IMG/VR virus record: IMGVR_UViG_3300031669_000001
Span: 248,001 to 312,000 of that record
Strand: one strand, 5' to 3'
DNA: 64,000 bases
Made by a program: the position numbers and the translations under genes. The notes under the pieces are model-generated. The model made no database searches and was not told where the DNA came from. It worked only from the letters and a program-made list of their open reading frames with translations. Below are positions 4,695 through 58,942 of this stretch, one piece after another; positions within the stretch are counted from its first letter, which is position 1; each line of letters starts with the position of its first letter.

Positions 4695-5191
4695 GAACCG
4701 ATACGAAGATTGTTAGCAGCTCTACCAGTCCAACCAGCCCCAAATGTAGACCAAACTGAGAGGTGACGCCAAAAGTCTAGACGCTCAGCTGTAAGAAGCA
4801 TGATTACTTGAGCTGGTTTAAAGCTCTTGATAGTTGCAACCGTAACAGGACCCACATTACCGTCGGGTGCAACACCAACAGCAGTTTGAAGATGTCTTAA
4901 AGCGGTTTGAATTCCGCTATTAACAGCAAAGTCAAAAACTTGGAATGAGATAGCTGGATCATATTGATCCATCTTACCTGCATCCCAGAAGAAAGCTTTG
5001 TAAATGACGCTCGCTTGATCACGAGTCATGTCGGCGATCGTTGTATCTGTTGGTAAAAGATTAGCACCGATAGCTTGGTGTAGAACTGGCCATGTGATAC
5101 CCCAGTTTGTTTCTCCACCAGGATCTGCTGGATTGTTTACGTAACCGCCTTCGTTGCCTATGATTCTATTGAATGCTGTTGGGTAGTCCAT
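4673..5191 (-). CDS. Endolysin, glycoside hydrolase family 108 with peptidoglycan-binding domain
   Basis: EGGYVNNPADPGGETNWGIT catalytic signature; FDFAVNSG; start reassigned to MDYPTAF at 5191. Confidence 0.9.
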   Translation of the reverse strand: MDYPTAFNRIIGNEGGYVNNPADPGGETNWGITWPVLHQAIGANLLPTDTTIADMTRDQASVIYKAFFWDAGKMDQYDPAISFQVFDFAVNSGIQTALRHLQTAVGVAPDGNVGPVTVATIKSFKPAQVIMLLTAERLDFWRHLSVWSTFGAGWTGRAANNLRIGSQDIKES

Positions 5192-5263
5192 TATTTTCCT
5201 TTGTGTTAAAAATTCTTTCCACGATTGCATCTATGGAATAGTCAAACGTTGTGATCTCTACAT

Positions 5264-5634
5264 CTACGTTAGATGGACGCTCGAACATTTTGTTAGTGTC
5301 ATCAAATCTTCCAGCGTTGTAAGGGATCCGACTTGAATAGGGCTAAACTGGGAAACAGTCGAATTTATACCTAGTTGCCCATCAACATTCAATCCCCAAC
5401 TCCAAAGAGTTCCATCAGTTTTTAATGCTAATGAATTTGTATAAGCAGCAATTGCTGACCAAGTGATTCCTGATCCTACTTGAGTAGGACTGCTTATATG
5501 AGGCCAGCCAACAGGACCAAGATTTAATCCTAGGTCACCATCTAAGTTATACTCCAAGACCATAGACCACCTACAACAGGACCTAGGCTAGGTTTTACTG
5601 CACTTCCAATCCCTATAAAAAATGAACTAAACAT
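5264..5634 (-). pseudogene. Frameshifted, truncated RCC1/BLIP-II-repeat protein
   Basis: ATG 5634 overlaps the upstream TAA and reads [27 protein letters not shown]. The RCC1 consensus continues (YNLDGDLGLN...DGTLWSWGLNVDGQLG) only after a frameshift at about 5552-5556. Only about 2 repeats remain. Confidence 0.7.
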
Positions 5635-8360
5635 TATGCCACTCCATGTTTGCTTAATCCAAACCATACATGTGTAGAATCTACAACATAGAATGTAAGT
5701 AAGTTAACTGCACTGGCAGTGGTAGACACCGTAGGTATTGTTCCATCATTAGAAATCCAATTGGTGTCAAAGGTTAAGGTCGAAGGTGTTGCATTTTGTG
5801 TGATAGCAATTTGTCCACTTGTCCCAGCTACTGCATTTGTTGGGTTGCTCAATACCTGTGAAGTTGTAGCTTGCAGAGCCAATGAGAAGTTATTCGTTAA
5901 ACTTAAATTCACGGCAACCGCATTTGCTGCAACTGAAAGAGCTGTCACGGCAAACGATTGTGTAGCGGTGAAAGTTTCCACATTTGCGAGATATGCCACA
6001 CCAGCAGGTACTACACCTGTTGGACCTGTTGGGCCTTCAAGACCTGTAGGACCTGTAGGACCTTCTATACCAGCCGGACCTGTAGCTCCATCTGCACCAG
6101 TTGGACCAGTGAGTGAAGGACCGGTAGGACCGTCTAAACCTGTAGGACCGGTAGGACCGTCTAAACCTGTAGGACCGGTAGGACCGTCTAAACCTGTAGG
6201 ACCGGTAGGACCGTCTAAACCTGTAGGACCGGTAGGACCGTCTAAACCAGTAGGACCACCAGCTGGGCCTGTAGCTCCAGTAGGACCAGTTACGAATGAG
6301 TCGGCACCTGTAGGACCTGTAGCACCTTCAAGACCTGTAGGACCAGTTACGAATGAATCTGCACCCGTAGCACCAGTTGGACCAGTGAGTGAAGGACCGG
6401 TAGGACCGTCTAAACCTGTAGGACCGGTAGGACCGTCTAAACCTGTAGGACCACCAGCTGGGCCTGTAGCTCCAGTAGGACCAGTTACGAATGAGTCGGC
6501 ACCTGTAGGACCTGTAGCACCTTCAAGACCTGTAGGACCAGTTACGAATGAATCTGCACCCGTAGCACCAATAGGACCTGTAGGACCTGTAGCACCTTCA
6601 AGACCAGTAGGACCAGTTACGAATGAGTCGGCACCTGTAGGACCTGTAGCACCTTCAAGACCTGTAGGACCAGTTACGAATGAATCTGCACCCGTAGCAC
6701 CAATAGGACCTGTAGGACCTGTAGCACCTTCAAGACCTGTAGGACCAGTTACAAATGAGTCGGCACCAGTTGCACCAGTTGCACCTATAGCTCCAGTAGG
6801 ACCAGTTACGAATGAGTCTGCACCTGTAGGACCTGTTGGACCGTCTAAACCTGTAGGACCTGTAGCACCTTCAAGACCTGTTGGGCCTGTAGGACCACCA
6901 GCTGGACCTGTTGGGCCTTCAAGACCTGTAGGACCTGTAGGGCCACCAAACGCACCTGTAGGACCAACTTCGCCCGTAGGACCCGTAGCACCTTCTAGAC
7001 CAGTAGCTCCAGTAGCTCCAGTAGCGCCAGTGTTACCTAAATTACCTTGAGGACCTGTAGGGCCGGTTACGAATGAGTCTGCACCAGTAGGACCGGTAGG
7101 ACCGCCGAATGGACCTTGAGGACCTGTAGGACCTATCGCGCCAGTAGCGCTGTTAGCACGGATAGTTCCATAAGAAGATGCGCTCCAACCTGTAAAGACA
7201 GATTCTGTGTTCAGATAGATTGTAGTTGGAACAGCCAGAACATATCTCTTTGTTGTCAGAGGAACTTCATAGATTGTAGTGAACGTTGTATTAGTAAAGT
7301 CTTGTGCGTTAGTTTGAAAGTTAAATCCATTGCCTGTACCAATCACCGCGCTTGTAGAATTTGAAGCTCCAGAGAGCGTAGTTACAGATGCACCAGCTGA
7401 AATTGGAGATTCATTTGCAGTACCTGTACCTGTACCGGGACCTGTAGCAACGAAAGTTGTTCCAGATAAACTATCTGTTGCGCCTATCAAAGTAAAATCT
7501 GTATTGCCTGGACTTGCAATTGTGTAAGAATATCCAGTTACAAAAGAACCAGCTGTTACTATTGGAGCAACAAATTGGTAACCTACGAAACCTGAAATAT
7601 CCCACGAACCCGCTGATAGTGAGATGCTTGTAATGTTCGCAGTTAAACCTGATGTCAATGTAACAGGAACAGATATGACAGATTCTACGTAGATACCATC
7701 ACCTGTTGCGCCTGTAGGACCAGTAATTGACAATCCATCTGCACCAGTAGGACCTGTAGGTCCTTCGAGACCCGTAGGACCTGTTACAAAAGAGTCAGCA
7801 CCAGTAGGACCAGTAATAGCTAGACCATCAGGACCTGTAGGACCTGTTACAAAAGAGTCAGCACCAGTAGGACCAGTAGGACCACCAAATGCACCTGTAG
7901 GACCAACATCTCCTGTAGGACCTGTAATCGAAGGACCAGTAGGACCAGTAACTGAAGGACCTGTAGGACCACCAGGTCCTACAAAACCAGATTTGATAGA
8001 ACCATCAAGCTGCATAACTGAGAAGCCGTCTGTGTCAATGTAAGCTAGAGTTTCACTAGATTGAAGAGTTATCTTGCAAAGAACGTATGTGATAGCGTTA
8101 TCGTTGACTTGTAAAGTCACTACGATCGGTGCCGTATCCGCGTTGTAGATAGTGAGAGCTTTTAACTGTCTTTGAGTAGCTGCTGCAGGTGCAGTTACCA
8201 TTGGTTGAGCTATTGTAGAGCCGATGTTTCCATCAGAGCTCAGTGGAGTAAATGTTGTGCTTGTGATGTCAACGTAGCTAGCTGTCCAAGGTATGGAAGC
8301 TCCTGGAAGAGATCCTAAGAAGATCTCAAGAGATTTAGTAGTTGTATCAAAAATGATCAT
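5634..8360 (-). CDS. Collagen-like (Gly-Pro-Thr) tail/whisker fibre protein, 908 aa
   Basis: Two long G-X-Y tracts (GPT, GAT, GLE) separated by globular domains; C-terminal fibre-tip-like domain. Confidence 0.85.
6118..6252. repeat. 27-bp tandem repeat x5 inside the collagen gene
   Basis: ggaccggtaggaccgtctaaacctgta units (encode TGLDGPTGP). Confidence 0.9.
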
Positions 8361-8361
8361 A

Positions 8362-9729
8362 TTAGACTCTCAGTGAAATAAGTGTTAGTACTTGTTGTTG
8401 ATTTGCAGATGACGGTCCTGTAGGTCCTGTTATTGATGGTCCTGCAGGACCTGTAGAACCTGCTGGACCAGTTGGTCCTTCTACATTCGAAGCTGCTCCA
8501 GTAGGTCCCGTTATCGATGGTCCTGTAGCGCCTGTAGGTCCAACTGAACCAACAGGACCGGCGCTTCCAGGTAATCCAGCAACACCTTGAGGACCTGTTG
8601 CGCCTTTTACACCGGCGGGTCCGATAGCGCCAGGCGCACCAACAGGTCCTGTAGGTCCCGCTACACCAGCTCCTGTAGGTCCTGTAATTGATATGCCAGC
8701 GGGACCTGTTGCACCAACCTGTCCAATGGCACCAGCGGGACCTGTAGGACCGTCAACGCTTCTACCGACAGAGTAAGATGCATTCGTTGTCAGTAATACA
8801 GTCTGAGCGCTTAAAATTATAGCAACTTGCTGAGATATTAAGTTAGACGCTAAAGGTGCAGTTTGTGTTAACTCGCCTATAGATCTTGGAGAAGTATCTG
8901 CGTATAAAACTTTACCTTGAGTTAAATCCCAATTCCAATTAGAATTGTAAACTACGCCACCTGTTATTATCTTTGCTGCCTGACCATACGTTAAATTTAC
9001 ATCTACGATACCGATGATAGGGTGTATTAAATCTGCGCCATCTGCTACGCTGATAGTACCTTCACTTTTAACTGAAACACAGTAGAAAGCTGGTATAGAT
9101 TCAGCGGCTATAGACTGAATTTCTAGATCAACAGGAACAGAGTAATTACCTTGATCAACAGCAACAGGTGACGCTGTCGTTAGGAAGTTTCCATTGATCG
9201 TTTTGATTCCCGATCCATCGCTGCCTCGTAGGATGTAACCAGCTGCAACATCATTAGTTGTATCTGGTCCAAGTCCAACTTGAGTTCCCAAAGGTTCAAA
9301 TGTAAAGCTCGATCCACCATTGAAGGAACCTGCAAAGACTCTACACTTTTCTACCCACTGACTTCCACTCCACACCTTCATAATGAATGTGTTTAGATCA
9401 TACCAATGTTGATCTACTGCCGGCGCTGTTGGAGTCACGCTCGATGTTATAGGATCATAAATCGTGTAACTTCTAGTGATGAGACCTGTCGCTAAGTCGA
9501 TATCCCAATAGAGATAGAATGGAGCAGAACCACTGAATGGACCCCAAGCATTTGCAACCGAAGAAACTTCATTGATCAGGTAATTTGCCTGACCGTACGT
9601 AACCGTTACGATGACAGGCGTCGTCGGCGTAGCTAAGATTTGAACGTACGTGCCATTATAGTCAAGGAAAGATGGACTTCCATTAACTATCGGTGCTGTA
9701 ACTATACCTTGCCTGAAATTTAATTTCAT
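8362..9729 (-). CDS. Virion protein with C-terminal collagen-like tract
   Basis: About 120 aa of G-X-Y repeats at the C-terminus; late box upstream; co-transcribed with 5634-8360. Confidence 0.75.
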
Positions 9730-11527: not shown

Positions 11528-12298
11528 TTATTTGCCAGCCAAATACAGCTCATAAGTGCGAGGGAACTGCTTCTGAATCAGTTCACCTACTGCATCTGCA
11601 TACTGACGAATTTCCCATTGAGCTGCAGGTGCCTGCCGCAACGTCAAGAATGCAAGCCAATTGCGAAGATTTGCGCTGGCTCTCATTCGAGAATAACGTG
11701 CAACAGGCACTGGAAGACGAGCGAGTTCCTTTGGAATTCCAGCTTCAATTCCCTGCTCATAGATCGATTGGCAATTTTCGTAGCAAATCTCAAGAGTTGA
11801 TCTCCAATCTTTTGCTTCCTGCTCAGTTAACGCCTTACCTGTTCCTTGAGCTTGCTTGTTGGTAGTTGTAGTGTTTGCACCTAACATCAATCGTTCGATC
11901 GAAGGGATGTAGTTCTCGTCTGGAAGAGGGATGTAGCGAGCTGACATCTCATTGTAGCTCTGCGTGCGATGACGGTGCCATTCACGGAACACGAAGATAG
12001 GAGCCTTGACTTCGATTACCATACCAGCCATTTCAAATGGAGTGGAGTGCTTGTTGTTGTAGAGGAAAGCAAGAAGCTTTTCATCTCCTGGAGTATCGTG
12101 ATCACACGTACAACGACGACTTATCGCCTCGAGGTGAGGAAGGTTGGAAGAGAGTCTACATGCCTTGGAATGATTTGGACCCCATCCAAGGAATCCTTTT
12201 CCAGTTGACATGCGTGCTGCCTCGATGATGCTTTCATCGCTTCCCCAATGATCGATAAAGCTAACGTAACCTTGGTCTAACACATCTAATTTCTTCAT
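11528..12298 (-). CDS. thyX: Flavin-dependent thymidylate synthase ThyX
   Basis: REWHRHRTQSYNEMSARY ThyX motif; HSTPFE; NLRNWLAFL; QWEIRQYA. Confidence 0.95.
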   Translation of the reverse strand: MKKLDVLDQGYVSFIDHWGSDESIIEAARMSTGKGFLGWGPNHSKACRLSSNLPHLEAISRRCTCDHDTPGDEKLLAFLYNNKHSTPFEMAGMVIEVKAPIFVFREWHRHRTQSYNEMSARYIPLPDENYIPSIERLMLGANTTTTNKQAQGTGKALTEQEAKDWRSTLEICYENCQSIYEQGIEAGIPKELARLPVPVARYSRMRASANLRNWLAFLTLRQAPAAQWEIRQYADAVGELIQKQFPRTYELYLAGK

Positions 12299-12635: not shown

Positions 12636-12989
12636 TTACTTAGTTGAACATTTTTCCACGGTGGTTCGTGAACCCAACCTGAAAAATTGATTCCTGATAG
12701 CGATCGCTTCCTCGAAGGATAGTTCGCTCTTGATGACAGCTGGAAGCTGAGAGATGACATCATTAACCTCATTGAAATTCTGCCCATTGAGGTCTTTGAT
12801 TAGGTTGATGGTATTTAACGTGCTGTGCCCAAAGGAATGCATCAACACTTCAAATTTATTTTGAGAACTTTCATCAAGGAAAGCTTCATACTGCCTAGCG
12901 ATCGCTATCACCCACTCGCCTTGATTTCTCTCAACGTTGGGTGATAGAGTTTGGACAGCCAAGCTTAACGCCAGCTGCTTGTTGTTCAC
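12636..12989 (-). CDS. Protein with ribosomal protein bL12 (L7/L12) C-terminal-domain-like region
   Basis: NTINLIKDLNGQNFNEVNDVISQLPAVIKSELSFEEAIAIRNQFFRLGSRTTVE parallels the bL12 CTD pattern (VIK.VR.LTGLGLKEAK..VE..P..IKE.VS.EEA..IK..LEEAGA.VE). Confidence 0.6.
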   Translation of the reverse strand: MNNKQLALSLAVQTLSPNVERNQGEWVIAIARQYEAFLDESSQNKFEVLMHSFGHSTLNTINLIKDLNGQNFNEVNDVISQLPAVIKSELSFEEAIAIRNQFFRLGSRTTVEKCSTK

Positions 12990-13561
12990 ACAGATCCTTT
13001 GCCGATCAGCGAGTGATTGTAGCTGAGACCGTTAAACTTCCAGTCAAGACGCTTCGAGAGTTCCTTCTTCAGGAGGCCGAGGTCGGCGAGAATGGTTGTT
13101 TGTGTTTGTGGATCGTCGTTCAGCTTGGAGTCAGAGTAACGAACGGTGTTGCTGAGGATGACCTGAACTTTGACGTCAGTTCCACCGGAGTTGTACTCGA
13201 AGTCTGGAGTACGCACAGCGGACACGCGGAAGCCGCGACGATTTTTAACGCGTGACTTTTCAGCCCAGTGTTTTAACACTTCGCGAAGCGAAGATTTGAC
13301 TGCGCGAACTTCGAACTTATCAGTGATGCTCAACTTTACCTTGAGATCGACGATCTGCAGCGTGTCTTTTGGATCATGTGCTACCGAGATCATGCCGCTG
13401 AAGTCGGAGTCGGTCAGCATCGCTACGATCGCTTCAGATTGTGTTTGCGCGACACATTCCTTGAATGTTGATTTATCAGCGATGACACCTGTCGGTGAAT
13501 CGAAGCTTTCAACTTCGGCATCGAATCCACGGATCACGAAACTTTTCTTTGGTTTGCTCAT
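12986..13561 (-). CDS. Hypothetical protein
   Basis: 191-aa ORF, 4-nt overlap with the downstream gene. Confidence 0.65.
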   Translation of the reverse strand: MSKPKKSFVIRGFDAEVESFDSPTGVIADKSTFKECVAQTQSEAIVAMLTDSDFSGMISVAHDPKDTLQIVDLKVKLSITDKFEVRAVKSSLREVLKHWAEKSRVKNRRGFRVSAVRTPDFEYNSGGTDVKVQVILSNTVRYSDSKLNDDPQTQTTILADLGLLKKELSKRLDWKFNGLSYNHSLIGKGSV

Positions 13562-13612
13562 TTTCTTTTTTCCTTTTGCTAGGTTGTACTACGAAATTTT
13601 CTCATTTAATGC

Positions 13613-14077
13613 TCATTTTGCCCTATACCCTACTCTTAGATTTGCAGGAACGTGAGACATGATCCACTTGTCCATACCATTTCCCACCTTTTCACCAATT
13701 TGATCCATTTCAAACACAGCGAATCCATCCATCTCTGGAAAGTTAGGACCTTTCAGATTCTCTACCATTGAGATACACTTCATGATCCGAGTGTCGATCT
13801 TTTCAACCTCGATGTAATAGAGGTGAAGGTCTTTCTTATTATCGTAATCGTGCTGACCGAGATCGATTACCGAATCGATACCAAAGAAGATTTCCAAACC
13901 TGTCTCTTCAAATAGTTCACGCTTCGCAGCTGCGAAGTGATCTTCACCTTCATCAGCGGCACCTTTTGGAAGATCCCACCTATTTCCAGTGTTTGTTGGA
14001 TGACAGAGTAGCCAGCCGCTAGGAAAACCGTTCTTTGTTTCTGCTATGATGAATCCACAACTGCATTTATTTTTCAA
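13613..14077 (-). CDS. nudE: Nudix hydrolase, T4 NudE-like
   Basis: RWDLPKGAADEGEDHFAAAKRELFEETG Nudix box; KDLHLY and PEMDGF segments as in NudE. Confidence 0.85.
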   Translation of the reverse strand: MKNKCSCGFIIAETKNGFPSGWLLCHPTNTGNRWDLPKGAADEGEDHFAAAKRELFEETGLEIFFGIDSVIDLGQHDYDNKKDLHLYYIEVEKIDTRIMKCISMVENLKGPNFPEMDGFAVFEMDQIGEKVGNGMDKWIMSHVPANLRVGYRAK

Positions 14078-14103
14078 GATGATCTTTCTTTAGAATTTCG
14101 TCT

Positions 14104-14132
14104 ATTATATCACAAGTAGAATTCAATGTTAA
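14104..14132 (-). promoter_or_regulatory. Early promoter
   Basis: TTAACA-N17-TATAAT with TGTGA extension. Confidence 0.7.
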
Positions 14133-14139
14133 CTTTCTT

Positions 14140-14328
14140 TCATGAAGTCTGCCTATAGTCTTCTGGCGCCAACACTTCATTGAGACTACTCAAGACGAAA
14201 TCTTCAACCTCTACCAGATGCTGATCAACTTGCTTAAGAAGATCTTGCGCGGCCTCTTCAGAAACACAATGTCCACTTAAGCCAGACATCGAGATGATAT
14301 TTCGAATTGCTGCAATGTTGTCTCTCAT
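14140..14328 (-). CDS. Hypothetical protein
   Basis: 62-aa ORF, ATGA overlap with the upstream gene. Confidence 0.55.
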   Translation of the reverse strand: MRDNIAAIRNIISMSGLSGHCVSEEAAQDLLKQVDQHLVEVEDFVLSSLNEVLAPEDYRQTS

Positions 14329-14579
14329 CCGAAGATGTTCTCACAGATGTCACAAAGGTCGAAGAATGGATCTCGTCTGATTTCTTTTGAATCAGGCAGC
14401 GCCATCCAAAATGTATTCAACATCGAGACAAGTTTGTCATCGTCAAATTCACTCTGATCAATAGACGCGGTGCTCATGTTATACTTACCCAAGACCTTCA
14501 GGTATAGATCGATGTAATACTTTTCCGAGAAGATCTTATCTTGAAGGTTTATTGCAGCTCGTTGAATTTCTGTAGTCAT
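14325..14579 (-). CDS. Hypothetical protein
   Basis: 84-aa ORF coupled to the PARP stop. Confidence 0.6.
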   Translation of the reverse strand: MTTEIQRAAINLQDKIFSEKYYIDLYLKVLGKYNMSTASIDQSEFDDDKLVSMLNTFWMALPDSKEIRRDPFFDLCDICENIFG

Positions 14580-15922
14580 TATTTTTCCTCGAACTCGATG
14601 AGGTATCGAATGTTGACTTGACTGTTTCGATACACTATCATCTCATTGTTCATCACACCGCTCTTGCCAGCTTCTGCAAATGTAGAATCATAACCAGCTT
14701 TTGGCAGTGACTCATAAGAGCTCCGGGGTGTGTAATGTTTACCCATTGCGAAGTCGACTAAGAACATGAAGCAGTTCTTGTCTGTCGCACCGCGATCCCA
14801 ATAACCACGCGCGTAGTTCAACGCCTTGGTAGACTGATCTGAACCGTAGATACCATCGCCGAACATCCGGCCTGTTACCTGGAACGAACCACTCTTTGGT
14901 GGGCAGAAGAGACCGCTCTTCAGGATCGACAGCACGTTGAACACGCGAGTACCGTGCCAAAGCATTTGAATGTTTGGCAGCTTAGCACCATCTTTATCAA
15001 ATGCAGCTTTGCGCTCTGACATGTTCACTTCGTAGAAGCGAATCGGCTTCATGTTCTTTGACTCATGCCGATTGTTGATGCTGTCAAAGAACATTTTTTC
15101 AATCTTTGCAATCATGATCTTATCGCTGAGAATCTTCAAGTCTGCGTTGAAGATATTTGGAGTTGTAGCGAGAGTCGTTTGAACTGCAGAGGTCTTCGCA
15201 GCAGTAACGCGAGCTTCGGCGAGATCAGCAGATGCATCCAATTGATCGAGTAGGGTGCTTTGACTCTGCAGCGTGTTGTGACCTGAGAAGAATTCTTTGT
15301 GCCAGCCGCGCCGATGCCCGACTGTCTGAGGAACGAGCATCAAGTAAGTATTGAGGTTCTCGATGAATTGCTTGTCATCAAACTTTTGCTTCGCGACAAA
15401 CTTGTCCATCGCGTCGAGGGTTGCACGTGCCTGTTTCACGGTGTCCTTAGTGATCACGCCGATTGGAGTTGAAATGATACCTGTCGTCAAGTCGATGTCC
15501 ATCTGACCACCAGAAGCTTTGACCAACTCATGTCTGTTAGCTTCGACGAGACGTTCGATAAGCTTTGATAGCTCAGTGTCACCGCCGCCGAGTTGTTGCT
15601 TGGCAGCTTCACGAACAACGGCCTTAGACATAGCAGGCCCTGTAGGAGCGATGTCAGCTTTCTCAGCGAGGATGGCGATTTCACGGTATGGCGGCTTGTA
15701 GGTTGCAGAACCTTCTTTACCGCTTCCCTTCAGCTTTTCGCGAATTTTTGCATCGAGCTGCTTGCGCGTCATATGCTTTGGATCATCTTCATTGCGAGTC
15801 TTTCCAACTCGACCGTAGATAACGGTAACCATCTCAGTGTCAGTGTCGTACTTGTATTCCCAGAACTTGTTGTTGTTGTTAAGCGCGTCGGCGCACACGA
15901 ATTTCTTATGTTCGATTGTCAT
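14579..15922 (-). CDS. Poly(ADP-ribose) polymerase-like protein (WGR + regulatory + catalytic domain)
   Basis: N-terminal NNNKFWE...YGRVG (WGR-like); catalytic H-Y-E triad in LWHGT, FGDGIYGS...KALNY and NNEMIVY; terminal YLIEF. Confidence 0.9.
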   Translation of the reverse strand: MTIEHKKFVCADALNNNNKFWEYKYDTDTEMVTVIYGRVGKTRNEDDPKHMTRKQLDAKIREKLKGSGKEGSATYKPPYREIAILAEKADIAPTGPAMSKAVVREAAKQQLGGGDTELSKLIERLVEANRHELVKASGGQMDIDLTTGIISTPIGVITKDTVKQARATLDAMDKFVAKQKFDDKQFIENLNTYLMLVPQTVGHRRGWHKEFFSGHNTLQSQSTLLDQLDASADLAEARVTAAKTSAVQTTLATTPNIFNADLKILSDKIMIAKIEKMFFDSINNRHESKNMKPIRFYEVNMSERKAAFDKDGAKLPNIQMLWHGTRVFNVLSILKSGLFCPPKSGSFQVTGRMFGDGIYGSDQSTKALNYARGYWDRGATDKNCFMFLVDFAMGKHYTPRSSYESLPKAGYDSTFAEAGKSGVMNNEMIVYRNSQVNIRYLIEFEEK

Positions 15923-16100
15923 GCTGCTTCCTTGAGTTTGATTGATAAGATAACGCTGCGATCATACGCGATAGCCACTTTATTTCTGGCCTCTTTTCAG
16001 AGTATGCAGCACGAATTAAAGTCCTGACACCCATCAATCGCTTGTTTATCGCATCAAATTCTCTGAACTTTATTTCAAAATTGTCTGGATTGTTATTCAT
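15906..16100 (-). CDS. Hypothetical protein (start MNNNPD)
   Basis: Fills the gap between neighbours with short overlaps. Confidence 0.5.
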   Translation of the reverse strand: MNNNPDNFEIKFREFDAINKRLMGVRTLIRAAYSEKRPEIKWLSRMIAALSYQSNSRKQHDNRT

Positions 16101-16485
16101 CGTCACTTCCCTTCTTAATCGCATCCTCGATTTTATCCCAGCTGGATCCGATTAACACCATGCTGAGAATGACGATCACTCCTAAGAACCAATGGTCGTA
16201 CCATACGAGAACTCCAGCGAGCACCAAGTCGGTGTAGTTGAACAGCTTTGACAACTTTGAACGTGAAGATTTAGCCTTGACTAACATCTCCTTGCCCGTG
16301 TCAGTGGTGATCGCGATGCTGCTGAAGAATAATATCCAGATAAAAAACACCATCAAGTTGTAAGCGCCTGCAACATTCTTGACAATTGCAAAGTAGACCA
16401 GCACCCACATGATAACGTTGTAGACTGTCTGTTTTAGTTCTCTCATTTGTTTTCCTTTGGAAATTGTAAACGCGTCATTCATCAA
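16093..16485 (-). CDS. Hypothetical membrane protein
   Basis: 3-4 hydrophobic segments. Confidence 0.65.
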   Translation of the reverse strand: MMNDAFTISKGKQMRELKQTVYNVIMWVLVYFAIVKNVAGAYNLMVFFIWILFFSSIAITTDTGKEMLVKAKSSRSKLSKLFNYTDLVLAGVLVWYDHWFLGVIVILSMVLIGSSWDKIEDAIKKGSDDE

Positions 16486-17701
16486 GCTCCGCGGTGGTCT
16501 GCAAAAGGTTCAATTGACGTAAGCCAAATTGTTCACGTAGGTAGTTGCGTTCGTAGAAGCCATTGTAGTCTGGCTCCTTGCCGTCCTTCTTGTTCATGAT
16601 CAGCTTGAAGAAAGGATGGTTGTAGCCTTGCGAACCGTAAAGCAACGCAAGCTCTTTCTTTGTCTTGTTACAAACAAGTTCAAAGATGTCATTGACTGTC
16701 CAGATGATCGCATCTATCTCAGCAACCACTCGAGTTTCGATGGCGTTGATCTCGGTGATATCGCAACCTTCACCAACCAGTACCGACTTTAAGTCATCCA
16801 GAGTTTCATTCAACACCATCTCAGCGATGTCACGTTCGCGCAGGAAGGTCATTGCTTTGTGACGCTCCATGTACCAAGCAGTTTTTACCTTCAACATTTC
16901 ACCGCTTTCAAACTGAACTACTACGCCTTCAACATCTGTAGTTTCTTCAATGTAGCGCTTAACGCCCTCGGGATTGTCAAACATCTTCTTGAGGTGATCG
17001 AGTTCAGTTACAACAGGGATATAAAACGATTTTGCAGTTACTTCCAACTCTGCGGTCTTAAAGTATTCACCTGTAACGTTGTGACGAATGTGCAACAAGG
17101 TCAATGAATCGTGCTTGTAACCTATGACTATCCGTGCAACTGGGGAAGTCCACTCGAAGATAGCAGTGAGATCATTCTCAACGCACCAATTGCAAAAATC
17201 GCCGTAGCGTGGATAGGCAAAGGAGGAAGAGAGGAGAAAGGAAGGAGAAGGAGTTGCAGTTTCAGCTAACATCAAGAAGCCCTTAGCTTGGTGTGCAACG
17301 TCAGACACGTAGCTCTTCTTTGACTTTAAATCAAAGTTGAGGTTACTTGGCCATAATTTGTCTGTATTCTTTACAGCGACTGTGTGGATCATTGAACCGT
17401 CGCGCTTGTCCATCACGCGAACAACCTTGGACCAGTCGATATTCTCAAAGAGCACATCTTGATTCTGATTCAGGTTGCTAAATTTGTGAAGTGGGCGGGC
17501 AATTACTTTGCCGTCTTTGAATACGATGCCGCGAGCTTCACGAGAGTACATCTCGTCGAAGGTACCATCGCAAGAGACGATGTAGGAACAAACGACAGTT
17601 CCATTATCTTGGTCCATGAAGCGAATTTCAGGCTTGTGAGCGACAGCCTGACGCATTGCCAAGTCATCAGTAAGAACTGGAAATACCAAATCGTTGCTCA
17701 T
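16475..17701 (-). CDS. rnlA: RNA ligase 1 (T4 Rnl1-like)
   Basis: EARGIVF, RPLHKFSNLN, motif I KRDGSMI, FEWTSP..RIV, EGVVVQF...LKVKTAWY. Confidence 0.9.
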   Translation of the reverse strand: MSNDLVFPVLTDDLAMRQAVAHKPEIRFMDQDNGTVVCSYIVSCDGTFDEMYSREARGIVFKDGKVIARPLHKFSNLNQNQDVLFENIDWSKVVRVMDKRDGSMIHTVAVKNTDKLWPSNLNFDLKSKKSYVSDVAHQAKGFLMLAETATPSPSFLLSSSFAYPRYGDFCNWCVENDLTAIFEWTSPVARIVIGYKHDSLTLLHIRHNVTGEYFKTAELEVTAKSFYIPVVTELDHLKKMFDNPEGVKRYIEETTDVEGVVVQFESGEMLKVKTAWYMERHKAMTFLRERDIAEMVLNETLDDLKSVLVGEGCDITEINAIETRVVAEIDAIIWTVNDIFELVCNKTKKELALLYGSQGYNHPFFKLIMNKKDGKEPDYNGFYERNYLREQFGLRQLNLLQTTAELDE

Positions 17702-17727
17702 CTTTGCTCCAATCTTTAAGATGAGTC

Positions 17728-17756
17728 ATTATATCACCAGTCCTACTGAAAGTAAA
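17728..17756 (-). promoter_or_regulatory. Early promoter
   Basis: TTTACT-N17-TATAAT. Confidence 0.85.
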
Positions 17757-17875
17757 CAGTTATATGTAGTTTATTCGTTATCCATGATGAAACGTGGGTA
17801 ATAATGATAATCTACAAATGTCATCTTTGATAAGATTTTTGATAGTCCAATATGATCACTTAGTGGATGCATACA

Positions 17876-17906
17876 AACTTTCGCAGGATATTTTCCTGCG
17901 AAAGTT
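17876..17906. terminator. 13-bp inverted repeat, probable terminator
   Basis: aactttcgcagga-tattt-tcctgcgaaagtt, downstream of the 17932 microprotein. Confidence 0.6.
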
Positions 17907-17931
17907 GAATTATAAATGATGTAACAAAACA

Positions 17932-18003
17932 TTATTTTGCAGGAACTGGTTGTTTCTTTGGCTTTTTCTTTTCTTTGGTGCTGCGTTGTTGACCTTTTGC
18001 CAT
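17932..18003 (-). CDS. 23-aa lysine-rich microprotein MAKGQQRSTKEKKKPKKQPVPAK
   Basis: Below the ORF-track cutoff; GAGGA RBS 7 nt upstream; starts 2 nt after the nuclease stop. Confidence 0.7.
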   Translation of the reverse strand: MAKGQQRSTKEKKKPKKQPVPAK

Positions 18004-18005
18004 GA

Positions 18006-18779
18006 TTATTTCCTCTTTTGTTTTGCTTGTATTAACCAAGCTTGATAGTTAGCAACTGTGGTTTTGTCGAGACTTGGATCAAACTTGATTCCAGTAACAG
18101 CTTCAATCGCCTCCAAGTTTACAACAAATTTTGATAGGTCGTGTTCAGGCTCGTTAGGCATCATGAATGCGATTGACTTTCCAGTCTGAGCATCGATCAT
18201 GATCTTCCACAGTGAGCTTGGAACCCAAACTTTATCCTTACCGATCGTAGGTGGATTGATGGTCTTGTAGACTGGACCTGTGATGACGTAGACACCAGCT
18301 GGATGGCTCTTCGTGTAGCCTCGAATGTAAGTTTCCATTTGCTTCCAGATAACCTCATTGTTTTTGTAATTTTGAGGCACCATGTTGGACATGAAGAACG
18401 ACTCATGAACGCAAACTTCACACGCGCTGAAGTCTTGATCTGGGGTCATGTGACCGCGATCGCATCTTCCGCCGTTACACATGGAATGCACGTAATCTTT
18501 TGGAGAAGATTGATGACTTGGATCGATGGCTGGATCTACTCTAAAGTCATTGCTTCTCTTCATCTTTCCAGTGTGATTAGCTGCGAGAAATTCAGTCGTG
18601 TAGATAGGATTTCTGCTCGTCCAAGAGTAGGCGACGGCGTATTCTTTGTGGCAGATATACTGGTCAGCGTTGATAACTGGGGCTGACTTGTAAGTTAGCT
18701 GTTTGCAGGAATCATCAATAGGATTTGCAAACGCGGTGGTTGCTGCAAGCAGCAAGAATAGAGAAAGTAGTTTCTTCAT
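18006..18779 (-). CDS. Exported DNA/RNA non-specific endonuclease (NucA/Serratia-type)
   Basis: Signal peptide MKKLLSLFLLLAATTAFA; DRGHMTP active-site motif; SFFMSNMVPQ; YVITGP. Confidence 0.9.
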   Translation of the reverse strand: MKKLLSLFLLLAATTAFANPIDDSCKQLTYKSAPVINADQYICHKEYAVAYSWTSRNPIYTTEFLAANHTGKMKRSNDFRVDPAIDPSHQSSPKDYVHSMCNGGRCDRGHMTPDQDFSACEVCVHESFFMSNMVPQNYKNNEVIWKQMETYIRGYTKSHPAGVYVITGPVYKTINPPTIGKDKVWVPSSLWKIMIDAQTGKSIAFMMPNEPEHDLSKFVVNLEAIEAVTGIKFDPSLDKTTVANYQAWLIQAKQKRK

Positions 18780-32564: not shown

Positions 32565-32932
32565 TTGACGAATCCATAACGAATCAACATGATAGGACTC
32601 GATCCGTCAGACCACTTACAATCAACCTTGATAGCAAGCTGATTGAATCTTTTTGCTCCGCGATTAGCATCGAAGTACATTTCCTCCTCTACCCAATCGC
32701 TAACCCATGTCAGATTGTTATCGTGAATGATCTGATCTGACCTTGACAGGCTTAGCTTGAGATGTCCACACCAAACTTCAACGAGATTATAACCATCATC
32801 TCGTATCGTAACGTAGAATCTGTTCAGTCTAATCTTGACAACTTCGTAAAGTTGTCCTACTCGCAGTCTAGGTGGTTTATCGAAGTAAGGCATCGATGTC
32901 AGCGTAACTGGAGAACCGATTTCCAAGTTCAT
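32558..32932 (-). CDS. Hypothetical protein
   Basis: 124-aa ORF coupled to the CoaE-CoaD stop. Confidence 0.55.
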   Translation of the reverse strand: MNLEIGSPVTLTSMPYFDKPPRLRVGQLYEVVKIRLNRFYVTIRDDGYNLVEVWCGHLKLSLSRSDQIIHDNNLTWVSDWVEEEMYFDANRGAKRFNQLAIKVDCKWSDGSSPIMLIRYGFVKC

Positions 32933-36693: not shown

Positions 36694-38178
36694 TTACGCG
36701 TAGGTGGTATCTGCCCGTGCCCAAGACTGTACTTCATCGAAGTCTTGGAAGCGTTTTTGCGCACCATCTTTTGACCACAATCTCCAGCCAGGACCATCAA
36801 CGAAGAAGGAAGCTGGGTTGGCAGTGCAATCACGAACCTCCAACTCACCGCTTTCCAGTTCGAAAGGACGAACCAAACCACGCAGAGACTTCTTGCCCAG
36901 GTCGGTGATTGGTTCTTTAACCAAAGACCTCCAACCGTTTGCATCCATCATCGCGATTGCCTTCATGCTGAAGCTGAAGTCATCGCGAGCACCTTCGTGG
37001 GTAACACCAGCACCCATACCCAAGGTCAGGCTGTCCATGCTGTAACCTTTGCTAGTGAATCCTTCCAGCACTGGCTCGATGGTGTTGATGCGGATTCCAT
37101 CACCTTGGATGACGGCGGTGCAAGGTGCCAAGACCTTGTAACCGGCTGCATTCTTGTGGACACCGAAGGTATCTTCGATGTCCTTTGCGACCCGCGCCGG
37201 CTCAACAGTTGCATCGCCAGAGTCAGGACGCATGACCATCACACCACCACTGTTCTCGATCTCTTCGCGGAAGGTTTCACCCATGTACTCACGAACGAAG
37301 CGGCGAGCATTGTAGGTGTCGATAACGACGCTCAACAGTGGGATGCCTATGCCGCGCTTAGTACGAGCAACAACGGCGTGCAGGCGTTTCACTGCCATCT
37401 TCGCGGCGCCGAAGTCATCACGCTTGTCAGCGTCGCTGTGCGCGCACATTACGCTGTGCTCAGTAGCTTCAACGCTTGAGGTGTATGGCTTGTTGGAGAA
37501 AACGGTGTTCTTGTTGAACAGAGCTTTGATGTAACTGTTTGCGCGAGTGCAATCGCTACCATCGAACATCGCTGCGTGAGCGATACCCGCGATGACAGCA
37601 GCTTCATCTGGACTGTCTGCACCACGATCGCCGAAGTTGTGCAGCTTGTAATTCAGCATTCCCATGTTGGCGCCGGTCTTCTGCATGTACTTGGCGATGA
37701 TGATGCGAGCTGCGCGGCAGGTACTTGCTACGGTAGACATCTTCCAGACGGTGCATTGAACGACAGTCTCGACATAAGTAGGCAACCAGGCAAAGAGATC
37801 GTGAGTATTGACGATACCCAGCACTGGAGTTTGAGGCTTGACGATACGACCTTCTTCAACTGCCCATACTTCCAGCGGCAGCTTGCCGTCCAAATAGTCG
37901 ACCATGTACTGCCAGTCGGCGCGGTTGAATTCGTATCCTTGTTGGGTGATTTCGATATCAGCTTCATCGACCATCCACTGTTCGATGCGCACTGAAGCCA
38001 AAAAGTTTGCTACGTAGGTTTGACCCATCGCGACGATCTTATCTGCGTACTTGCTGGGTTTACGTGGAACGATAGCTGCGTAAGAACGCAGAGTTCCGTC
38101 GGGCAATTCTTGCCAGTGACCAGCTTTGTAGCTGTCGCAGGCCAGAATAAAGTTGAAGCGCTTTATCATTTGTAACAT
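36694..38178 (-). CDS. nadV: Nicotinamide phosphoribosyltransferase
   Basis: DSYKAGH, LHNFGDRG, EATEHSVM, SVVIDTYN, VMRPDSGD, VIQGDG, GMGAG, KEPITDLGKKS. Confidence 0.95.
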   Translation of the reverse strand: MLQMIKRFNFILACDSYKAGHWQELPDGTLRSYAAIVPRKPSKYADKIVAMGQTYVANFLASVRIEQWMVDEADIEITQQGYEFNRADWQYMVDYLDGKLPLEVWAVEEGRIVKPQTPVLGIVNTHDLFAWLPTYVETVVQCTVWKMSTVASTCRAARIIIAKYMQKTGANMGMLNYKLHNFGDRGADSPDEAAVIAGIAHAAMFDGSDCTRANSYIKALFNKNTVFSNKPYTSSVEATEHSVMCAHSDADKRDDFGAAKMAVKRLHAVVARTKRGIGIPLLSVVIDTYNARRFVREYMGETFREEIENSGGVMVMRPDSGDATVEPARVAKDIEDTFGVHKNAAGYKVLAPCTAVIQGDGIRINTIEPVLEGFTSKGYSMDSLTLGMGAGVTHEGARDDFSFSMKAIAMMDANGWRSLVKEPITDLGKKSLRGLVRPFELESGELEVRDCTANPASFFVDGPGWRLWSKDGAQKRFQDFDEVQSWARADTTYA

Positions 38179-40255: not shown

Positions 40256-41413
40256 TCATAATTTCCCCAGCATGTACTCGATGATGAAGTAGTGATCTTC
40301 GAAGAACATCTCAGGGCTCTTCATCACTTCATCCAATGGAACCCACCAGGCCTTCTCAGCATCATCGTCACCCTTAACCTTCGGCAGCGATATCTTGCCG
40401 TCTACTACGAAGTCAGGCAGCTTAAACAAAAATCCCTTGGTGACAGTGCGACCGCGTAAGGAACGTTCAGGATAATCGAAGTCTTCTTTGAAGATCATCG
40501 AGCTGCGCAGAATCGGTTCAGGAACCTTGATGCGAGTCTCTTCACGCAGTTCACGGATTGCAGCTTCAAACAATCGTTCTTTGGGGTTCAAGAAGCCTCC
40601 AGGCAGCGCCCACAAACCTTTTCCAGGACGGCTACGACGTTTAACCAGCAGCACGTGACCAGTTTGGATGACGATTGAATCAACCGTCTGGAAGATTGGT
40701 TCGTAGCGAAGACCGGGATCATTTTGACCATAAGTTCCAGGATCACGTGGTATGTTCGGTTTACGATACTCGATGTTGAAGAGATGCTCTTCACGCAGGT
40801 TGTCGTAGAATGGAGTCTCTTCGAAAGCGCGAAGCTCATTAATCGTTTCAGCTGGCAAGAATGCGTTCAATAACAATTCTGCGTGGTTAGCGGTGATCTC
40901 GTTGCCATCGAATGAACGGCCAAAGTAGATTTCACGGACTGCGGTGGCGGTCAAGAAGCGACTGACTTCCATATTTTCATCGACCATGTCAGCGATGAAG
41001 TTAGGAAAGTACTTCAAGTAGAACGTTGAGGAATCACGATCAGCACCAGTGATTCTGATCTCAATGTCTTTGGGATTGAGTTTGACTTGCTCAGCGCTAT
41101 CAACGAACTCGTTGATCACCTTGTTAACGTTTGCTATCCAAAGTTGATCATTGTAGGGGAAGTCTCGAATGCCACGCACTGATACCGGTGCATTTTTAGC
41201 GTGTGGAGTCCAAGGACGAGATGCCCACTTATCAATGACGCTTGCACGTTCTTCAAACGTCCAGGGATTTTTGGGATTTCTTGCTTGATTGATGGAACCG
41301 ATGAGGACCAGCACAGCGTCCGAGCGCTCACGTGCTCGCTTCAGAACTTCTGCATGTCCATTGTGGAATGGGGAAAATCGACCGATGTACACGGTCAGTA
41401 CAAACTTAGCCAT
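40256..41413 (-). CDS. natV: Bifunctional NMN adenylyltransferase / ADP-ribose pyrophosphatase (NadM-Nudix, NatV)
   Basis: YIGRFSPFHNGH, KNPWTFEER, D.PYNDQLW; Nudix box GLWALPGGF...E.L.EAAIRELREET; DDAEKAWW; FFEDH. Confidence 0.95.
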   Translation of the reverse strand: MAKFVLTVYIGRFSPFHNGHAEVLKRARERSDAVLVLIGSINQARNPKNPWTFEERASVIDKWASRPWTPHAKNAPVSVRGIRDFPYNDQLWIANVNKVINEFVDSAEQVKLNPKDIEIRITGADRDSSTFYLKYFPNFIADMVDENMEVSRFLTATAVREIYFGRSFDGNEITANHAELLLNAFLPAETINELRAFEETPFYDNLREEHLFNIEYRKPNIPRDPGTYGQNDPGLRYEPIFQTVDSIVIQTGHVLLVKRRSRPGKGLWALPGGFLNPKERLFEAAIRELREETRIKVPEPILRSSMIFKEDFDYPERSLRGRTVTKGFLFKLPDFVVDGKISLPKVKGDDDAEKAWWVPLDEVMKSPEMFFEDHYFIIEYMLGKL

Positions 41414-47066: not shown

Positions 47067-51299
<4,233 letters not shown>

Positions 51300-58936: not shown

Positions 58937-58942
58937 GAATCC

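What the first reader, a model, noticed from the sequence alone, without database searches (positions are those of the whole stretch)
14579..15922. Full-length WGR-PARP next to a Nudix gene, in a genome with its own NAD supply
Seen: WGR-like N-terminus, helical regulatory region and intact H-Y-E catalytic triad. A NudE-like hydrolase is three genes downstream, and NadV plus NadM-Nudix lie elsewhere in the window. Established: H-Y-E PARPs make poly(ADP-ribose) and WGR domains sense DNA; bacterial and phage PARPs are uncommon. Inference: a phage ADP-ribose write/erase/recycle cycle, possibly for DNA-end signalling or modifying host defence proteins.
Basis: partly seen in the sequence, partly recalled or inferred. 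Interest (0 to 1): 0.62.

Follow-up and report, generated by a model that had tools for sequence, protein, structure and literature searches.

The report
Jumbo-phage PARP enzyme, loosely linked Nudix
A soil jumbo phage carries an intact PARP1/2/3-type ADP-ribosyl transferase, a rare but already catalogued phage gene, and the nearby Nudix and NAD-salvage genes look like independent modules, not a dedicated write/erase/recycle circuit.

Summary
Window 14579-15922 (-) is a 447-aa ORF with WGR (about 1-88), helical regulatory (about 103-245) and ART (about 257-447) domains. H323/Y359/E427 are invariant in 50 relatives. The AlphaFold model aligns end to end with DNA-bound PARP1 WGR-CAT (Z 25.9). 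A Nudix gene is the third gene downstream, and NadV and NadM-Nudix lie 21-26 kb away. The genome is a complete 345-kb jumbo phage from soil.

- The Nudix is the T4-type nudE found in 1263 phage records; PARP is found in 16.
- The Nudix sits beside PARP in only 5 of 11 syntenic relatives and in no distant PARP phage, and it follows its own promoter-like site.
- NadV plus NadM-Nudix is the known NARP2 counter-defence pathway. A Nampt-family gene is present in 6 of 10 complete PARP phages.
- Better eraser candidates lie elsewhere in the genome: two macrodomain proteins and one ARH. No microbial-type PARG was found.
- PARP overlaps an Rnl1 RNA-ligase unit here. In two unrelated genomes it lies one gene from a DNA ligase.

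Phage PARPs of this architecture are already annotated and reviewed, but none has been tested. Verdict: new member of a known kind, moderate interest.

The parts
14579..15922 (-). PARP gene, 447 aa (WGR-HD-ART ADP-ribosyl transferase)
   Evidence: ORF. Pfam PARP, PARP_reg and WGR. PHROG 23333, E 1.4e-63. Best PDB sequence hits are PARP1/2/3. Structure Z 25.9 to the PARP1 WGR-CAT chain. dN/dS about 0.06-0.10, with dS saturated.
15659..15922 (-). WGR domain, residues about 1-88, with the motif YGR (Y36-G37-R38) and the invariant N16-N17-N18-K19
   Evidence: Pfam WGR 22.2 bits. Model residues 1-447 align to PARP1 543-1008. G37 and R38 are invariant. Y in place of W is usual in bacterial PARPs (PMC5966428).
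15188..15616 (-). Helical regulatory (HD) domain, residues about 103-245
   Evidence: Pfam PARP_reg 26.3 bits. Helices 96-244 in the model. HD+ART aligns to PARP1 663-1008.
14582..15154 (-). ART catalytic domain, residues about 257-447, with H323, Y359, E427, K366 and Y370
   Evidence: The Y-to-E spacing of 68 residues matches C. difficile PARP (H322/Y359/E428). It is 24 residues shorter than the Y896-to-E988 spacing of PARP1.
16475..17701 (-). T4 Rnl1-type RNA ligase, first gene of the overlapping unit that contains PARP
   Evidence: Pfam RNA_lig_T4_1 E 1.7e-23. PHROG 562. Lies upstream of PARP in 8 of 11 syntenic loci. Promoter-like site at 17756-17728.
15906..16485 (-). Two small overlapping ORFs (130 aa, probably membrane; 72 aa) between Rnl1 and PARP
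   Evidence: No family hits apart from a weak PHROG match. Stop and start codons overlap on both sides.
14140..14579 (-). Two small ORFs (84 aa, phrog_7464; 62 aa) overlapping the PARP stop codon and each other
   Evidence: The 84-aa ORF is shared with L010.
14104..14132 (-). Best sigma-70-like site of the region (TTAACA-17-TATAAT, 11 of 12, with TG), in the 62-nt gap before the Nudix gene
   Evidence: This is a consensus match only. The count of such sites is not above the shuffles (19 against 14.9 +/- 3.7).
13613..14077 (-). Nudix hydrolase, 154 aa, T4 nudE (e.1) type
   Evidence: Pfam NUDIX E 7.6e-11. PHROG 1185. tblastn finds 1263 phage records, mostly T4-like and annotated as nudix or nudE. 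NCBIfam gives only weak generic hits.
12986..13561 (-). Conserved 191-aa protein of unknown function, the most constant downstream neighbour of PARP in this lineage
   Evidence: Follows PARP in 9 of the 11 syntenic loci counted (window plus 10 relatives), often with overlapping stop and start codons. Small family with a WAEKSRVKNRRGFR motif; some members carry an N-terminal ACP-like domain. Confident model (pLDDT 92.6) with no convincing known fold.
36694..38178 (-). NadV / nicotinamide phosphoribosyltransferase (NARP2 component)
   Evidence: Pfam NAMPT_N and NAPRTase. NCBIfam NF006629, 361 bits.
40256..41413 (-). NadM-Nudix bifunctional NMN adenylyltransferase / Nudix (NARP2 component)
   Evidence: Pfam CTP_transf_like and NUDIX. 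NCBIfam NF003786, 329.6 bits.

Best explanation
The gene encodes a catalytically competent PARP1/2/3-clade ADP-ribosyl transferase (WGR-HD-ART) of an uncultured 345-kb soil jumbo myovirus. It belongs to an already recognised family of phage and bacterial PARPs.

Inferred mechanism, by homology:
- The helical domain keeps the NAD+ site closed.
- The WGR domain binds a DNA break or 5'-phosphorylated end and releases that block.
- The enzyme then transfers ADP-ribose from NAD+ to itself and to proteins near the break. The product is probably an oligomer or polymer, as in the same-sized bacterial enzymes HaPARP and CdPARP.

The gene is expressed as part of a tightly overlapping unit headed by an Rnl1 RNA ligase, inside a block of nucleotide and nucleic-acid metabolism genes. 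It most likely serves break or end sensing during infection. The T4-type Nudix and the NARP2 NAD+ pathway are independent, widely distributed phage modules. They may incidentally clear free ADP-ribose and replenish NAD+, but they are not dedicated partners.

Shown here: gene, domains, catalytic residues, conservation, synteny and distribution. Inferred: activity, DNA dependence, chain length, targets and biological role.
For: Domains and triad.
Full-length structural match to DNA-bound PARP1 and PARP2 WGR-CAT chains.
Purifying selection.
Large family, with at least 120 relatives at 46-97% identity, all 319-470 aa (most 430-455), several on contigs of 200-395 kb.
Annotated phage members (XacN1, Xoo-sp13, FBKp34, phi4:1).
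Literature: phage PARPs listed (PMC4245714; PMC7824862 cites XacN1 BBA65562.1). HaPARP and CdPARP automodify with PAR in reactions containing activated DNA, and HaPARP is reported to require DNA (PMC4245714; PMC5966428). CdPARP has the triad at H322/Y359/E428.
Operon structure.
Nudix independence.
NARP2 as counter-defence.
Ligase linkage in three unrelated contexts: Rnl1 here, ATP-dependent DNA ligase in phi4:1 and NAD-dependent LigA in Gemmobacter.
Against: No phage PARP has been assayed. None was found in two literature searches.
H-Y-E does not guarantee polymer synthesis.
The WGR match is at threshold by sequence (22.2 against 22.0 bits). The WGR piece alone finds nothing in the PDB by sequence.
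No PARG is encoded, so polymer turnover would need another enzyme (the PF05028 search has no working control).
Ligase linkage is absent in XacN1, FBKp34 and several IMG/VR phages.
Nampt-family genes are present in 6 of 10 complete PARP phages, well above the roughly 1% reported for NARP2 in phages overall. Some functional coupling to NAD+ supply therefore cannot be excluded.
Confidence: 0.62

Rival explanations
1. PARP, the nearby Nudix and NadV/NadM-Nudix form one ADP-ribose cycle. PARP writes, the Nudix degrades released ADP-ribose or cuts PAR, and NARP2 rebuilds the NAD+ that PARP consumes.
For: All parts are present in one genome. PARP and Nudix are close in 5 related loci and directly abutting in L025. 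T4 NudE is reported to hydrolyse ADP-ribose (from memory: Xu et al. 2002). Nampt-family genes occur in 6 of 10 complete PARP phages from at least three lineages. Macrodomain and ARH genes are also in the genome.
Against: The Nudix is present in 1263 phage records that almost all lack PARP. It is lost from 6 of 11 syntenic relatives while PARP stays. Four of 10 complete PARP phages have no Nudix. It follows a separate promoter-like site. NARP2 functions without PARP. The genes lie 21-26 kb apart, and the erasers 60-217 kb away.
Confidence: 0.17
2. A nucleic-acid-end modifier coupled to ligases. The enzyme acts like PARP3 or PARP2 on 5'-phosphorylated DNA or RNA ends, or mono-ADP-ribosylates repair proteins. 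It would mark or protect breaks made by host nucleases until Rnl1 or a DNA ligase seals them.
For: PARP lies within two genes of three different ligase families in three unrelated contexts. A CCA-adding enzyme sits next to PARP in phi4:1. The genome encodes a DarG-like macrodomain fused to a 2H phosphoesterase. The best NCBIfam hit of the Nudix is RNA pyrophosphohydrolase, but it is weak.
Against: Linkage is absent in many PARP phages. Phage replication and repair genes cluster anyway. No biochemical data exist. The characterised bacterial homologues automodify with PAR.
Confidence: 0.12
3. An NAD+-consuming take-over or exclusion device. DNA ends from host chromosome breakdown hyperactivate PARP, which drains host NAD+ or modifies host proteins in bulk (for example RNA polymerase, as T4 Alt and Mod do). 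The phage buffers itself with NARP2.
For: The jumbo-phage review proposes host-protein modification by phage PARPs (PMC7824862). A non-specific endonuclease gene lies nearby. NARP2 is present.
Against: The nuclease carries a signal peptide, read directly from its sequence, so it is probably not cytoplasmic. Four of 10 complete PARP phages lack Nampt. The retained HD and WGR domains argue for regulated, local activity.
Confidence: 0.06
4. A non-functional or decaying acquired gene.
For: None beyond the sporadic distribution of the gene.
Against: Intact ORF, invariant active site, dN far below dS, and conserved synteny.
Confidence: 0.02

Closest known systems
Annotated phage PARPs: Xanthomonas phage XacN1 ORF414 (BBA65562.1), Xoo-sp13, Stenotrophomonas CM1 and RAS14, Klebsiella FBKp34 gp111
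   Same: Full-length alignment over 98-100% of the protein at 30-39% identity. Same length and the same WGR + regulatory + catalytic architecture, which the FBKp34 record states explicitly. XacN1 and relatives are jumbo T4-related phages, as is this genome.
   Different: No Nudix or Rnl1 lies beside PARP in these phages. XacN1 has a vWA-domain gene downstream. The window's lineage is known only from metagenomes, with no megablast match among cultured phages.
Bacterial PARPs: Herpetosiphon aurantiacus HaPARP and Clostridioides difficile CdPARP
   Same: WGR-PARP_reg-PARP_cat in roughly 430-450 aa. The triad of CdPARP lies at nearly identical positions (H322/Y359/E428 against H323/Y359/E427). Y replaces W in the WGR motif. 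Both enzymes automodify with PAR in reactions containing activated DNA.
   Different: Those organisms also encode a PARG that removes the polymer. This phage has no detectable microbial-type PARG. Sequence identity to those two proteins was not measured here. The closest bacterial relatives found were Gemmobacter and Paracoccus, at 43%.
Human PARP1, PARP2 and PARP3 (clade 1 DNA-damage PARPs)
   Same: Same three C-terminal domains in the same spatial arrangement (Z 24-26, about 380 residues aligned) and the same H-Y-E triad.
   Different: No zinc fingers, BRCT or N-terminal tail. About 20% identity. The segment between the catalytic Tyr and Glu is 24 residues shorter. S904 of PARP1 is Ala here, and Y986 is Asn (read from the alignment).
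T4 NudE (gene e.1) Nudix hydrolase
   Same: Similar size, a canonical Nudix box, and 34-39% identity to the homologues in T4-like phages.
   Different: Substrate untested. No curated subfamily model is reached.
NARP2 (KVP40 Nampt + Nmnat-Nudix) NAD+ reconstitution pathway
   Same: Both enzymes are present with the same domain make-up. Function as shown for KVP40.
   Different: Here the two genes are 2 kb apart, with an R2K ATP-grasp gene between them. Both score below NCBIfam equivalog cut-offs.

Membership tests
Clade-1 PARP (WGR-HD-ART, PARP1/2/3-like) | ART fold with the H-Y-E NAD+-binding and catalytic triad | tested here: met
   Pfam PF00644 E 2.5e-23. H323, Y359 and E427 align to PARP1 H862/Y896/E988 and are invariant in 50 sequences.
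Clade-1 PARP (WGR-HD-ART, PARP1/2/3-like) | Helical regulatory (HD) domain N-terminal to the ART domain | tested here: met
   PF02877 scores 26.3 bits, 0.5 below the cut-off. Model residues 109-447 align to PARP1 663-1008 at Z 25-26.
Clade-1 PARP (WGR-HD-ART, PARP1/2/3-like) | WGR domain | tested here: met
   PF05406 scores 22.2 bits against a cut-off of 22. Model residues 1-447 align to PARP1 543-1008 and PARP2 92-565. G37 and R38 are invariant. The WGR piece alone gives no PDB hit by sequence.
Clade-1 PARP (WGR-HD-ART, PARP1/2/3-like) | DNA-break-dependent activation | not testable with these tools
   Inferred from the architecture and from HaPARP and CdPARP.
Clade-1 PARP (WGR-HD-ART, PARP1/2/3-like) | Synthesis of poly- as opposed to mono-ADP-ribose | not testable with these tools
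   H-Y-E is necessary but not sufficient, as PARP3 and PARP4 show.
Complete PAR metabolism (PARP + PARG) | A PARG encoded in the same genome | tested here: not met
   PF10021 gives no match, and its control rang in Deinococcus. PF05028 gives no match, but its control rang nowhere, so that search is inconclusive. Two macrodomain proteins and one ARH are present instead.
T4 NudE / ADP-ribose-active Nudix | Nudix box and homology to T4-like phage nudE | tested here: met
   Box read from the sequence. PF00293. 1263 phage hits annotated as nudix or nudE.
T4 NudE / ADP-ribose-active Nudix | Hydrolysis of ADP-ribose | not testable with these tools
   The best curated hits are weak and mixed: RppH 29.5 bits, NudE 21.5 bits, both far below their cut-offs. 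The best PDB hit is Chlamydia CT771.
E. coli NudE equivalog (NF008736) | Score above the curated cut-off | tested here: not met
   21.5 bits against a cut-off of 169.
NARP2 NAD+ reconstitution pathway | Nampt plus Nmnat encoded in the same phage | tested here: met
NARP2 NAD+ reconstitution pathway | Rescue from NAD+-depleting defence systems | not testable with these tools
   Shown for the KVP40 genes.
Dedicated PARP-Nudix operon | Adjacency conserved across independent lineages | tested here: not met
   Adjacent in 5 of 11 loci of one syntenic lineage only. No Nudix lies within 8 kb of PARP in the distant phages, except one at 3 kb (G010) and one at about 7 kb on the opposite strand (G008).

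The most novel reading that the evidence does not exclude
Phage and bacterial WGR-PARPs are partners of polynucleotide ligases. They sense 5'-phosphorylated breaks in DNA (or RNA) made by host defence nucleases and ADP-ribosylate the ends or the repair machinery. This would form a prokaryotic counterpart, perhaps a forerunner, of eukaryotic PARP-ligase break repair. The macrodomain-2H fusion and the Nudix enzymes would reverse or clear the mark.
Probability: 0.1. Interest if true: 0.72.

Novelty: new member of a known kind. Interest (0 to 1): 0.36.

Why it matters
PARPs are central to eukaryotic DNA-damage signalling, and their prokaryotic and viral relatives are thought to be close to their origin. 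No phage PARP has a demonstrated activity or role. This window adds a well-conserved, metagenome-wide lineage with cultured cousins (XacN1, FBKp34) in which the question could be tested. It also shifts attention from the Nudix neighbour to a recurrent PARP-ligase association. In practical terms, this genome's NAD+ and ADP-ribose genes are best read as several independent conflict and repair modules, not one circuit.

Tried and rejected
- Megablast of 13000-18000 against cultured phages found no match, so the lineage is known only from metagenomes.
- NCBIfam and PADLOC have no model for the PARP.
- The WGR piece alone against PDB sequences gave only chance T-cell-receptor hits.
- The 191-aa PARP neighbour was compared with the XacN1 vWA neighbour (E 0.5) and with the 185-aa PARP neighbour of Gemmobacter (hhalign probability 0.6%). 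It is related to neither.
- Fold searches for the 191-aa protein gave only background-level matches: Foldseek best was a de novo design, and VIA gave Z about 7 to GGDEF/palm-like folds. No function is assigned.
- A class-wide search for more bacterial PARP contexts found the family in only 2 of 401 alphaproteobacterial genomes sampled. That is too few to test ligase linkage.
- No RNA run holds the locus, so expression could not be checked and read laying was not used.
- Complex prediction was not run, because neighbouring genes alone are not sufficient grounds.
- The search of protein representatives was not run, because no claim here rests on an absence of relatives.
- dS is saturated, so the dN/dS values are only rough.
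- A naive check found that the first and last 50 bases of the genome differ. The 'direct terminal repeats' label is that of IMG/VR and was not verified here.
Full report
**What is there**

Window 14579-15922 (minus strand) is one uninterrupted 447-aa ORF with an ATG start and an AAGGAAG ribosome-binding site 6 nt upstream.
- Pfam finds the PARP catalytic domain (residues 274-414, E 2.5e-23), the PARP regulatory domain (133-229, 26.3 bits against a cut-off of 26.8) and WGR (12-64, 22.2 bits against 22.0).
- PHROGs places the protein in phrog_23333 over its full length (E 1.4e-63).
- phmmer against PDB sequences returns only PARP1, PARP2, PARP3 and PARP4 (best E 3e-17). The alignment puts H323, Y359 and E427 on PARP1 H862, Y896 and E988.
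- In an alignment of 50 relatives at 46-88% identity these three residues are invariant. So are G37-R38 of the WGR motif (YGR here), N16-K19, K366 and Y370.
- An AlphaFold2 model built on that alignment has mean pLDDT 80.2. It aligns over residues 1-447 with the WGR-HD-ART chain of human PARP1 bound to a double-strand break (4dqy_C, residues 543-1008, Z 25.9, 383 aligned). It also aligns with PARP2 on a DNA break (6x0m, Z 24.2).

The three-domain reading and the intact triad are therefore confirmed. Domain limits from the model are WGR about 1-88, a disordered linker 89-102, HD about 103-245 and ART about 257-447.

**The genome**

The window is bases 248001-312000 of a 345,069-bp IMG/VR virus record. 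IMG/VR classes it as having direct terminal repeats, and CheckV rates it 100% complete. The only run that holds the locus in full is a soil metagenome.
- No cultured phage matches at the DNA level.
- By the topoisomerase II large subunit, the nearest named phages are Xanthomonas BUDD and X1 (48%), Ralstonia RsoM2USA (44%) and XacN1 (43%). These are distant T4-related phages, several of them jumbo.
- The PARP lies in a long minus-strand block of nucleotide and nucleic-acid metabolism genes: dNMP kinase, a non-specific endonuclease, Rnl1 RNA ligase, ThyX and topoisomerase II.

**The other parts of the observation**

- A 154-aa Nudix with a canonical Nudix box lies at 13613-14077. It is the third gene downstream of PARP.
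- NadV/Nampt lies at 36694-38178 and a bifunctional NadM-Nudix at 40256-41413.

**Is the family known?**

Yes.
- tblastn finds full-length homologues (30-39% identity) in seven named phages. In XacN1, Xoo-sp13 and Klebsiella FBKp34 the gene is annotated as a poly(ADP-ribose) polymerase, and the FBKp34 record notes all three domains.
- A jumbo-phage review cites the XacN1 protein as a phage PARP and suggests it modifies host proteins with ADP-ribose chains (PMC7824862).
- An earlier survey lists PARPs in phages Aeh1 and Cellulophaga phi4:1 (PMC4245714).
- In the large protein collection, 3009 of the 8000 candidates scored have E <= 0.001, a count that probably also includes cellular and eukaryotic PARPs. 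The best 120 are 46-97% identical and nearly all of about the same length (319-470 aa, most 430-455). Several lie on contigs of 200-395 kb.
- The family is nevertheless rare in relative terms: 16 of 50,697 phage records and 2 of 401 alphaproteobacterial genomes sampled.
- The same-sized bacterial enzymes HaPARP and CdPARP have the same architecture. CdPARP has its triad at H322/Y359/E428. Both enzymes automodify with PAR in reactions that contain activated DNA, and HaPARP is reported to need DNA for activation.
- I found no experimental study of a phage PARP.

**Is PARP tied to the Nudix?**

The evidence is weak.
1. The Nudix matches 1263 phage records, mostly T4-like, where it is annotated as nudix or nudE (34-39% identity). 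Almost none of these phages has a PARP. Curated models give only weak, mixed hits: RppH 29.5 bits and E. coli NudE 21.5 bits against a cut-off of 169.
2. Twenty-one IMG/VR loci and two metagenome contigs with PARP were compared with the window. Ten of them share the window's synteny: dNMP kinase - endonuclease - Rnl1 - PARP - [Nudix] - 191-aa protein. Counting the window itself, that makes 11 syntenic loci. The Nudix is present beside PARP in only 5 of these 11.
3. In the more distant PARP phages no Nudix lies within 8 kb of PARP, with two exceptions: one at 3 kb (G010) and one at about 7 kb on the opposite strand (G008). Of 10 complete or near-complete PARP phage genomes, 4 have no Nudix at all.
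4. From Rnl1 to the 62-aa ORF after PARP, all the genes overlap stop to start. The Nudix follows a 62-nt gap that holds the best sigma-70-like site of the region.
5. The most constant downstream neighbour of PARP in this lineage is the 191-aa protein at 12986-13561 (9 of 11 loci). It has a confident predicted structure but no recognisable family or fold.

**Is PARP tied to the NAD+ supply?**

NadV plus NadM-Nudix is the KVP40-type pathway. It has been shown experimentally to rebuild NAD+ and to defeat the NAD+-depleting defences Thoeris and DSR2 (NARP2), and it is reported in about 1.1% of phages. That function is independent of any PARP and sufficient to explain the genes.

Nampt-family genes are nevertheless present in 6 of the 10 complete PARP phage genomes, from at least three lineages. 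This is a real enrichment. I treat it as compatible with some coupling but not as evidence for a dedicated cycle. The phage's own DNA ligase is ATP-dependent, so it is not an NAD+ consumer.

**Erasers**

A Nudix can hydrolyse free ADP-ribose or cut pyrophosphate bonds, but it does not remove the modification from proteins. The genome does encode plausible erasers outside the window:
- a MacroD/YmdB-like macrodomain protein;
- a DarG-like macrodomain fused to a 2H phosphoesterase;
- an ADP-ribosyl-arginine hydrolase close to Tri1/DraG (329 bits).

They lie about 60-217 kb from PARP. No microbial-type PARG was found. The search with the eukaryotic-type PARG model has no working control.

**A better-supported association**

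PARP lies within two genes of a polynucleotide ligase in three unrelated contexts, with a different ligase family each time:
- Rnl1 in the window's lineage (8 of 11 loci);
- an ATP-dependent DNA ligase in Cellulophaga phage phi4:1, which also has a CCA-adding enzyme directly upstream of PARP;
- an NAD-dependent LigA in Gemmobacter caeni, in an overlapping PARP - 185-aa ORF - LigA arrangement.

Four further phages have a ligase 4-9 kb from PARP. In eight others the ligase is distant or was not detected. This is suggestive but not conclusive, because repair and replication genes tend to cluster in phages anyway. It does fit the known role of the WGR domain in recognising DNA breaks.

**Selection**

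Against orthologues at 60-83% identity, dN is 0.14-0.33 and dS is above 2, which is saturated. dN/dS is therefore roughly 0.06-0.10. The gene is maintained by selection.

**Conclusion**

The finding is a correct reading of a real, intact gene. It is a new, metagenome-derived member of the known phage and bacterial WGR-PARP family.

The most likely mechanism is break-activated auto- and trans-ADP-ribosylation, probably oligo or poly, inside a nucleic-acid repair and metabolism unit. The Nudix and NARP2 act as independent modules. The write/erase/recycle circuit is possible but not supported by distribution, synteny or operon structure. The open and interesting question is what a phage PARP does during infection. 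The ligase association is the best lead, and cultured relatives exist in which to test it.

Noticed in passing
window 58646-58905 (-): A permuted (two-piece) tmRNA gene: Rfam RF04321, 84.5 bits against a gathering score of 47. ARAGORN also calls a permuted tmRNA at 58555-58937, with the tag ANDANGALALAA. From my own knowledge, permuted tmRNAs are typical of alpha- and some beta-proteobacteria and cyanobacteria, which may hint at the host. The closest bacterial PARP relatives are also alphaproteobacterial (Gemmobacter, Paracoccus).
   Followed up: partly
window 12636-12989 (-): A 117-aa ORF overlapping the stop codon of the 191-aa PARP-neighbour gene carries a ribosomal protein L7/L12 C-terminal domain (PF00542, E 1.1e-7, 32.5 bits against a cut-off of 25.9). 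This is unusual for a phage. It is conserved in L009 (cluster c17).
   Followed up: no
window 12986-13561 (-); P0123, P0133, P0134: The 191-aa protein that follows PARP in 9 of 11 syntenic loci has a confident model (pLDDT 92.6) but no known fold or family. Some homologues carry an N-terminal phosphopantetheine-binding (ACP-like) domain.
   Followed up: partly
window 32929-34020 (-): A fusion of dephospho-CoA kinase (CoaE) and pantetheine-phosphate adenylyltransferase (CoaD), the last two steps of CoA synthesis, encoded by the phage. This may relate to the ACP-like fusions noted above.
   Followed up: no
G000:C1:45684-46487, 183042-183401 and 201939-202328 (outside the window; L004, L003, L002): Three ADP-ribose-removing candidates: a Tri1/DraG-like ADP-ribosyl-arginine hydrolase, a MacroD/YmdB-like macrodomain protein, and a DarG-like macrodomain fused to a 2H phosphoesterase. 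They could act against host ADP-ribosylating toxins or signals as readily as with the phage PARP.
   Followed up: partly
L036 (Cellulophaga phage phi4:1) 2659-6441; L030 (Gemmobacter caeni) 5001-8919: PARP lies one gene from a DNA ligase in two unrelated genomes. The ligase is ATP-dependent in phi4:1 and an NAD-dependent LigA in Gemmobacter. This parallels the Rnl1-PARP unit in the window.
   Followed up: partly
window 18006-18779 (-): A DNA/RNA non-specific endonuclease (PF01223, E 1.9e-44) with a typical Sec signal peptide (MKKLLSLFLLLAATTAFA). This suggests a secreted or periplasmic phage nuclease.
   Followed up: no
window 11528-12298 (-) and 43721-44683 (-): Both a flavin-dependent ThyX and a ThyA-family thymidylate synthase homologue are in the same window. 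The ThyA-like gene may be a dNMP hydroxymethylase or similar DNA-modification enzyme.
   Followed up: no
window 39110-39922 (-): An R2K-clade ATP-grasp (DUF4343-like) gene sits between NadV and NadM-Nudix. XacN1 has a DUF4343 gene 2 kb upstream of its PARP, and cluster c19 is shared by L005 and L023.
   Followed up: no
window 5634-8360, 8362-9729 (-) and 47067-51299 (+): Three large proteins with collagen triple-helix repeats, probably fibres. They are followed by a glycine-rich-domain protein (51301-52185) and lie near two GT2 glycosyltransferase-TPR genes (44881-47000).
   Followed up: no
window 3342-4355 (-): A TerC/DUF475 integral membrane protein (E 2.4e-100) encoded by the phage.
   Followed up: no
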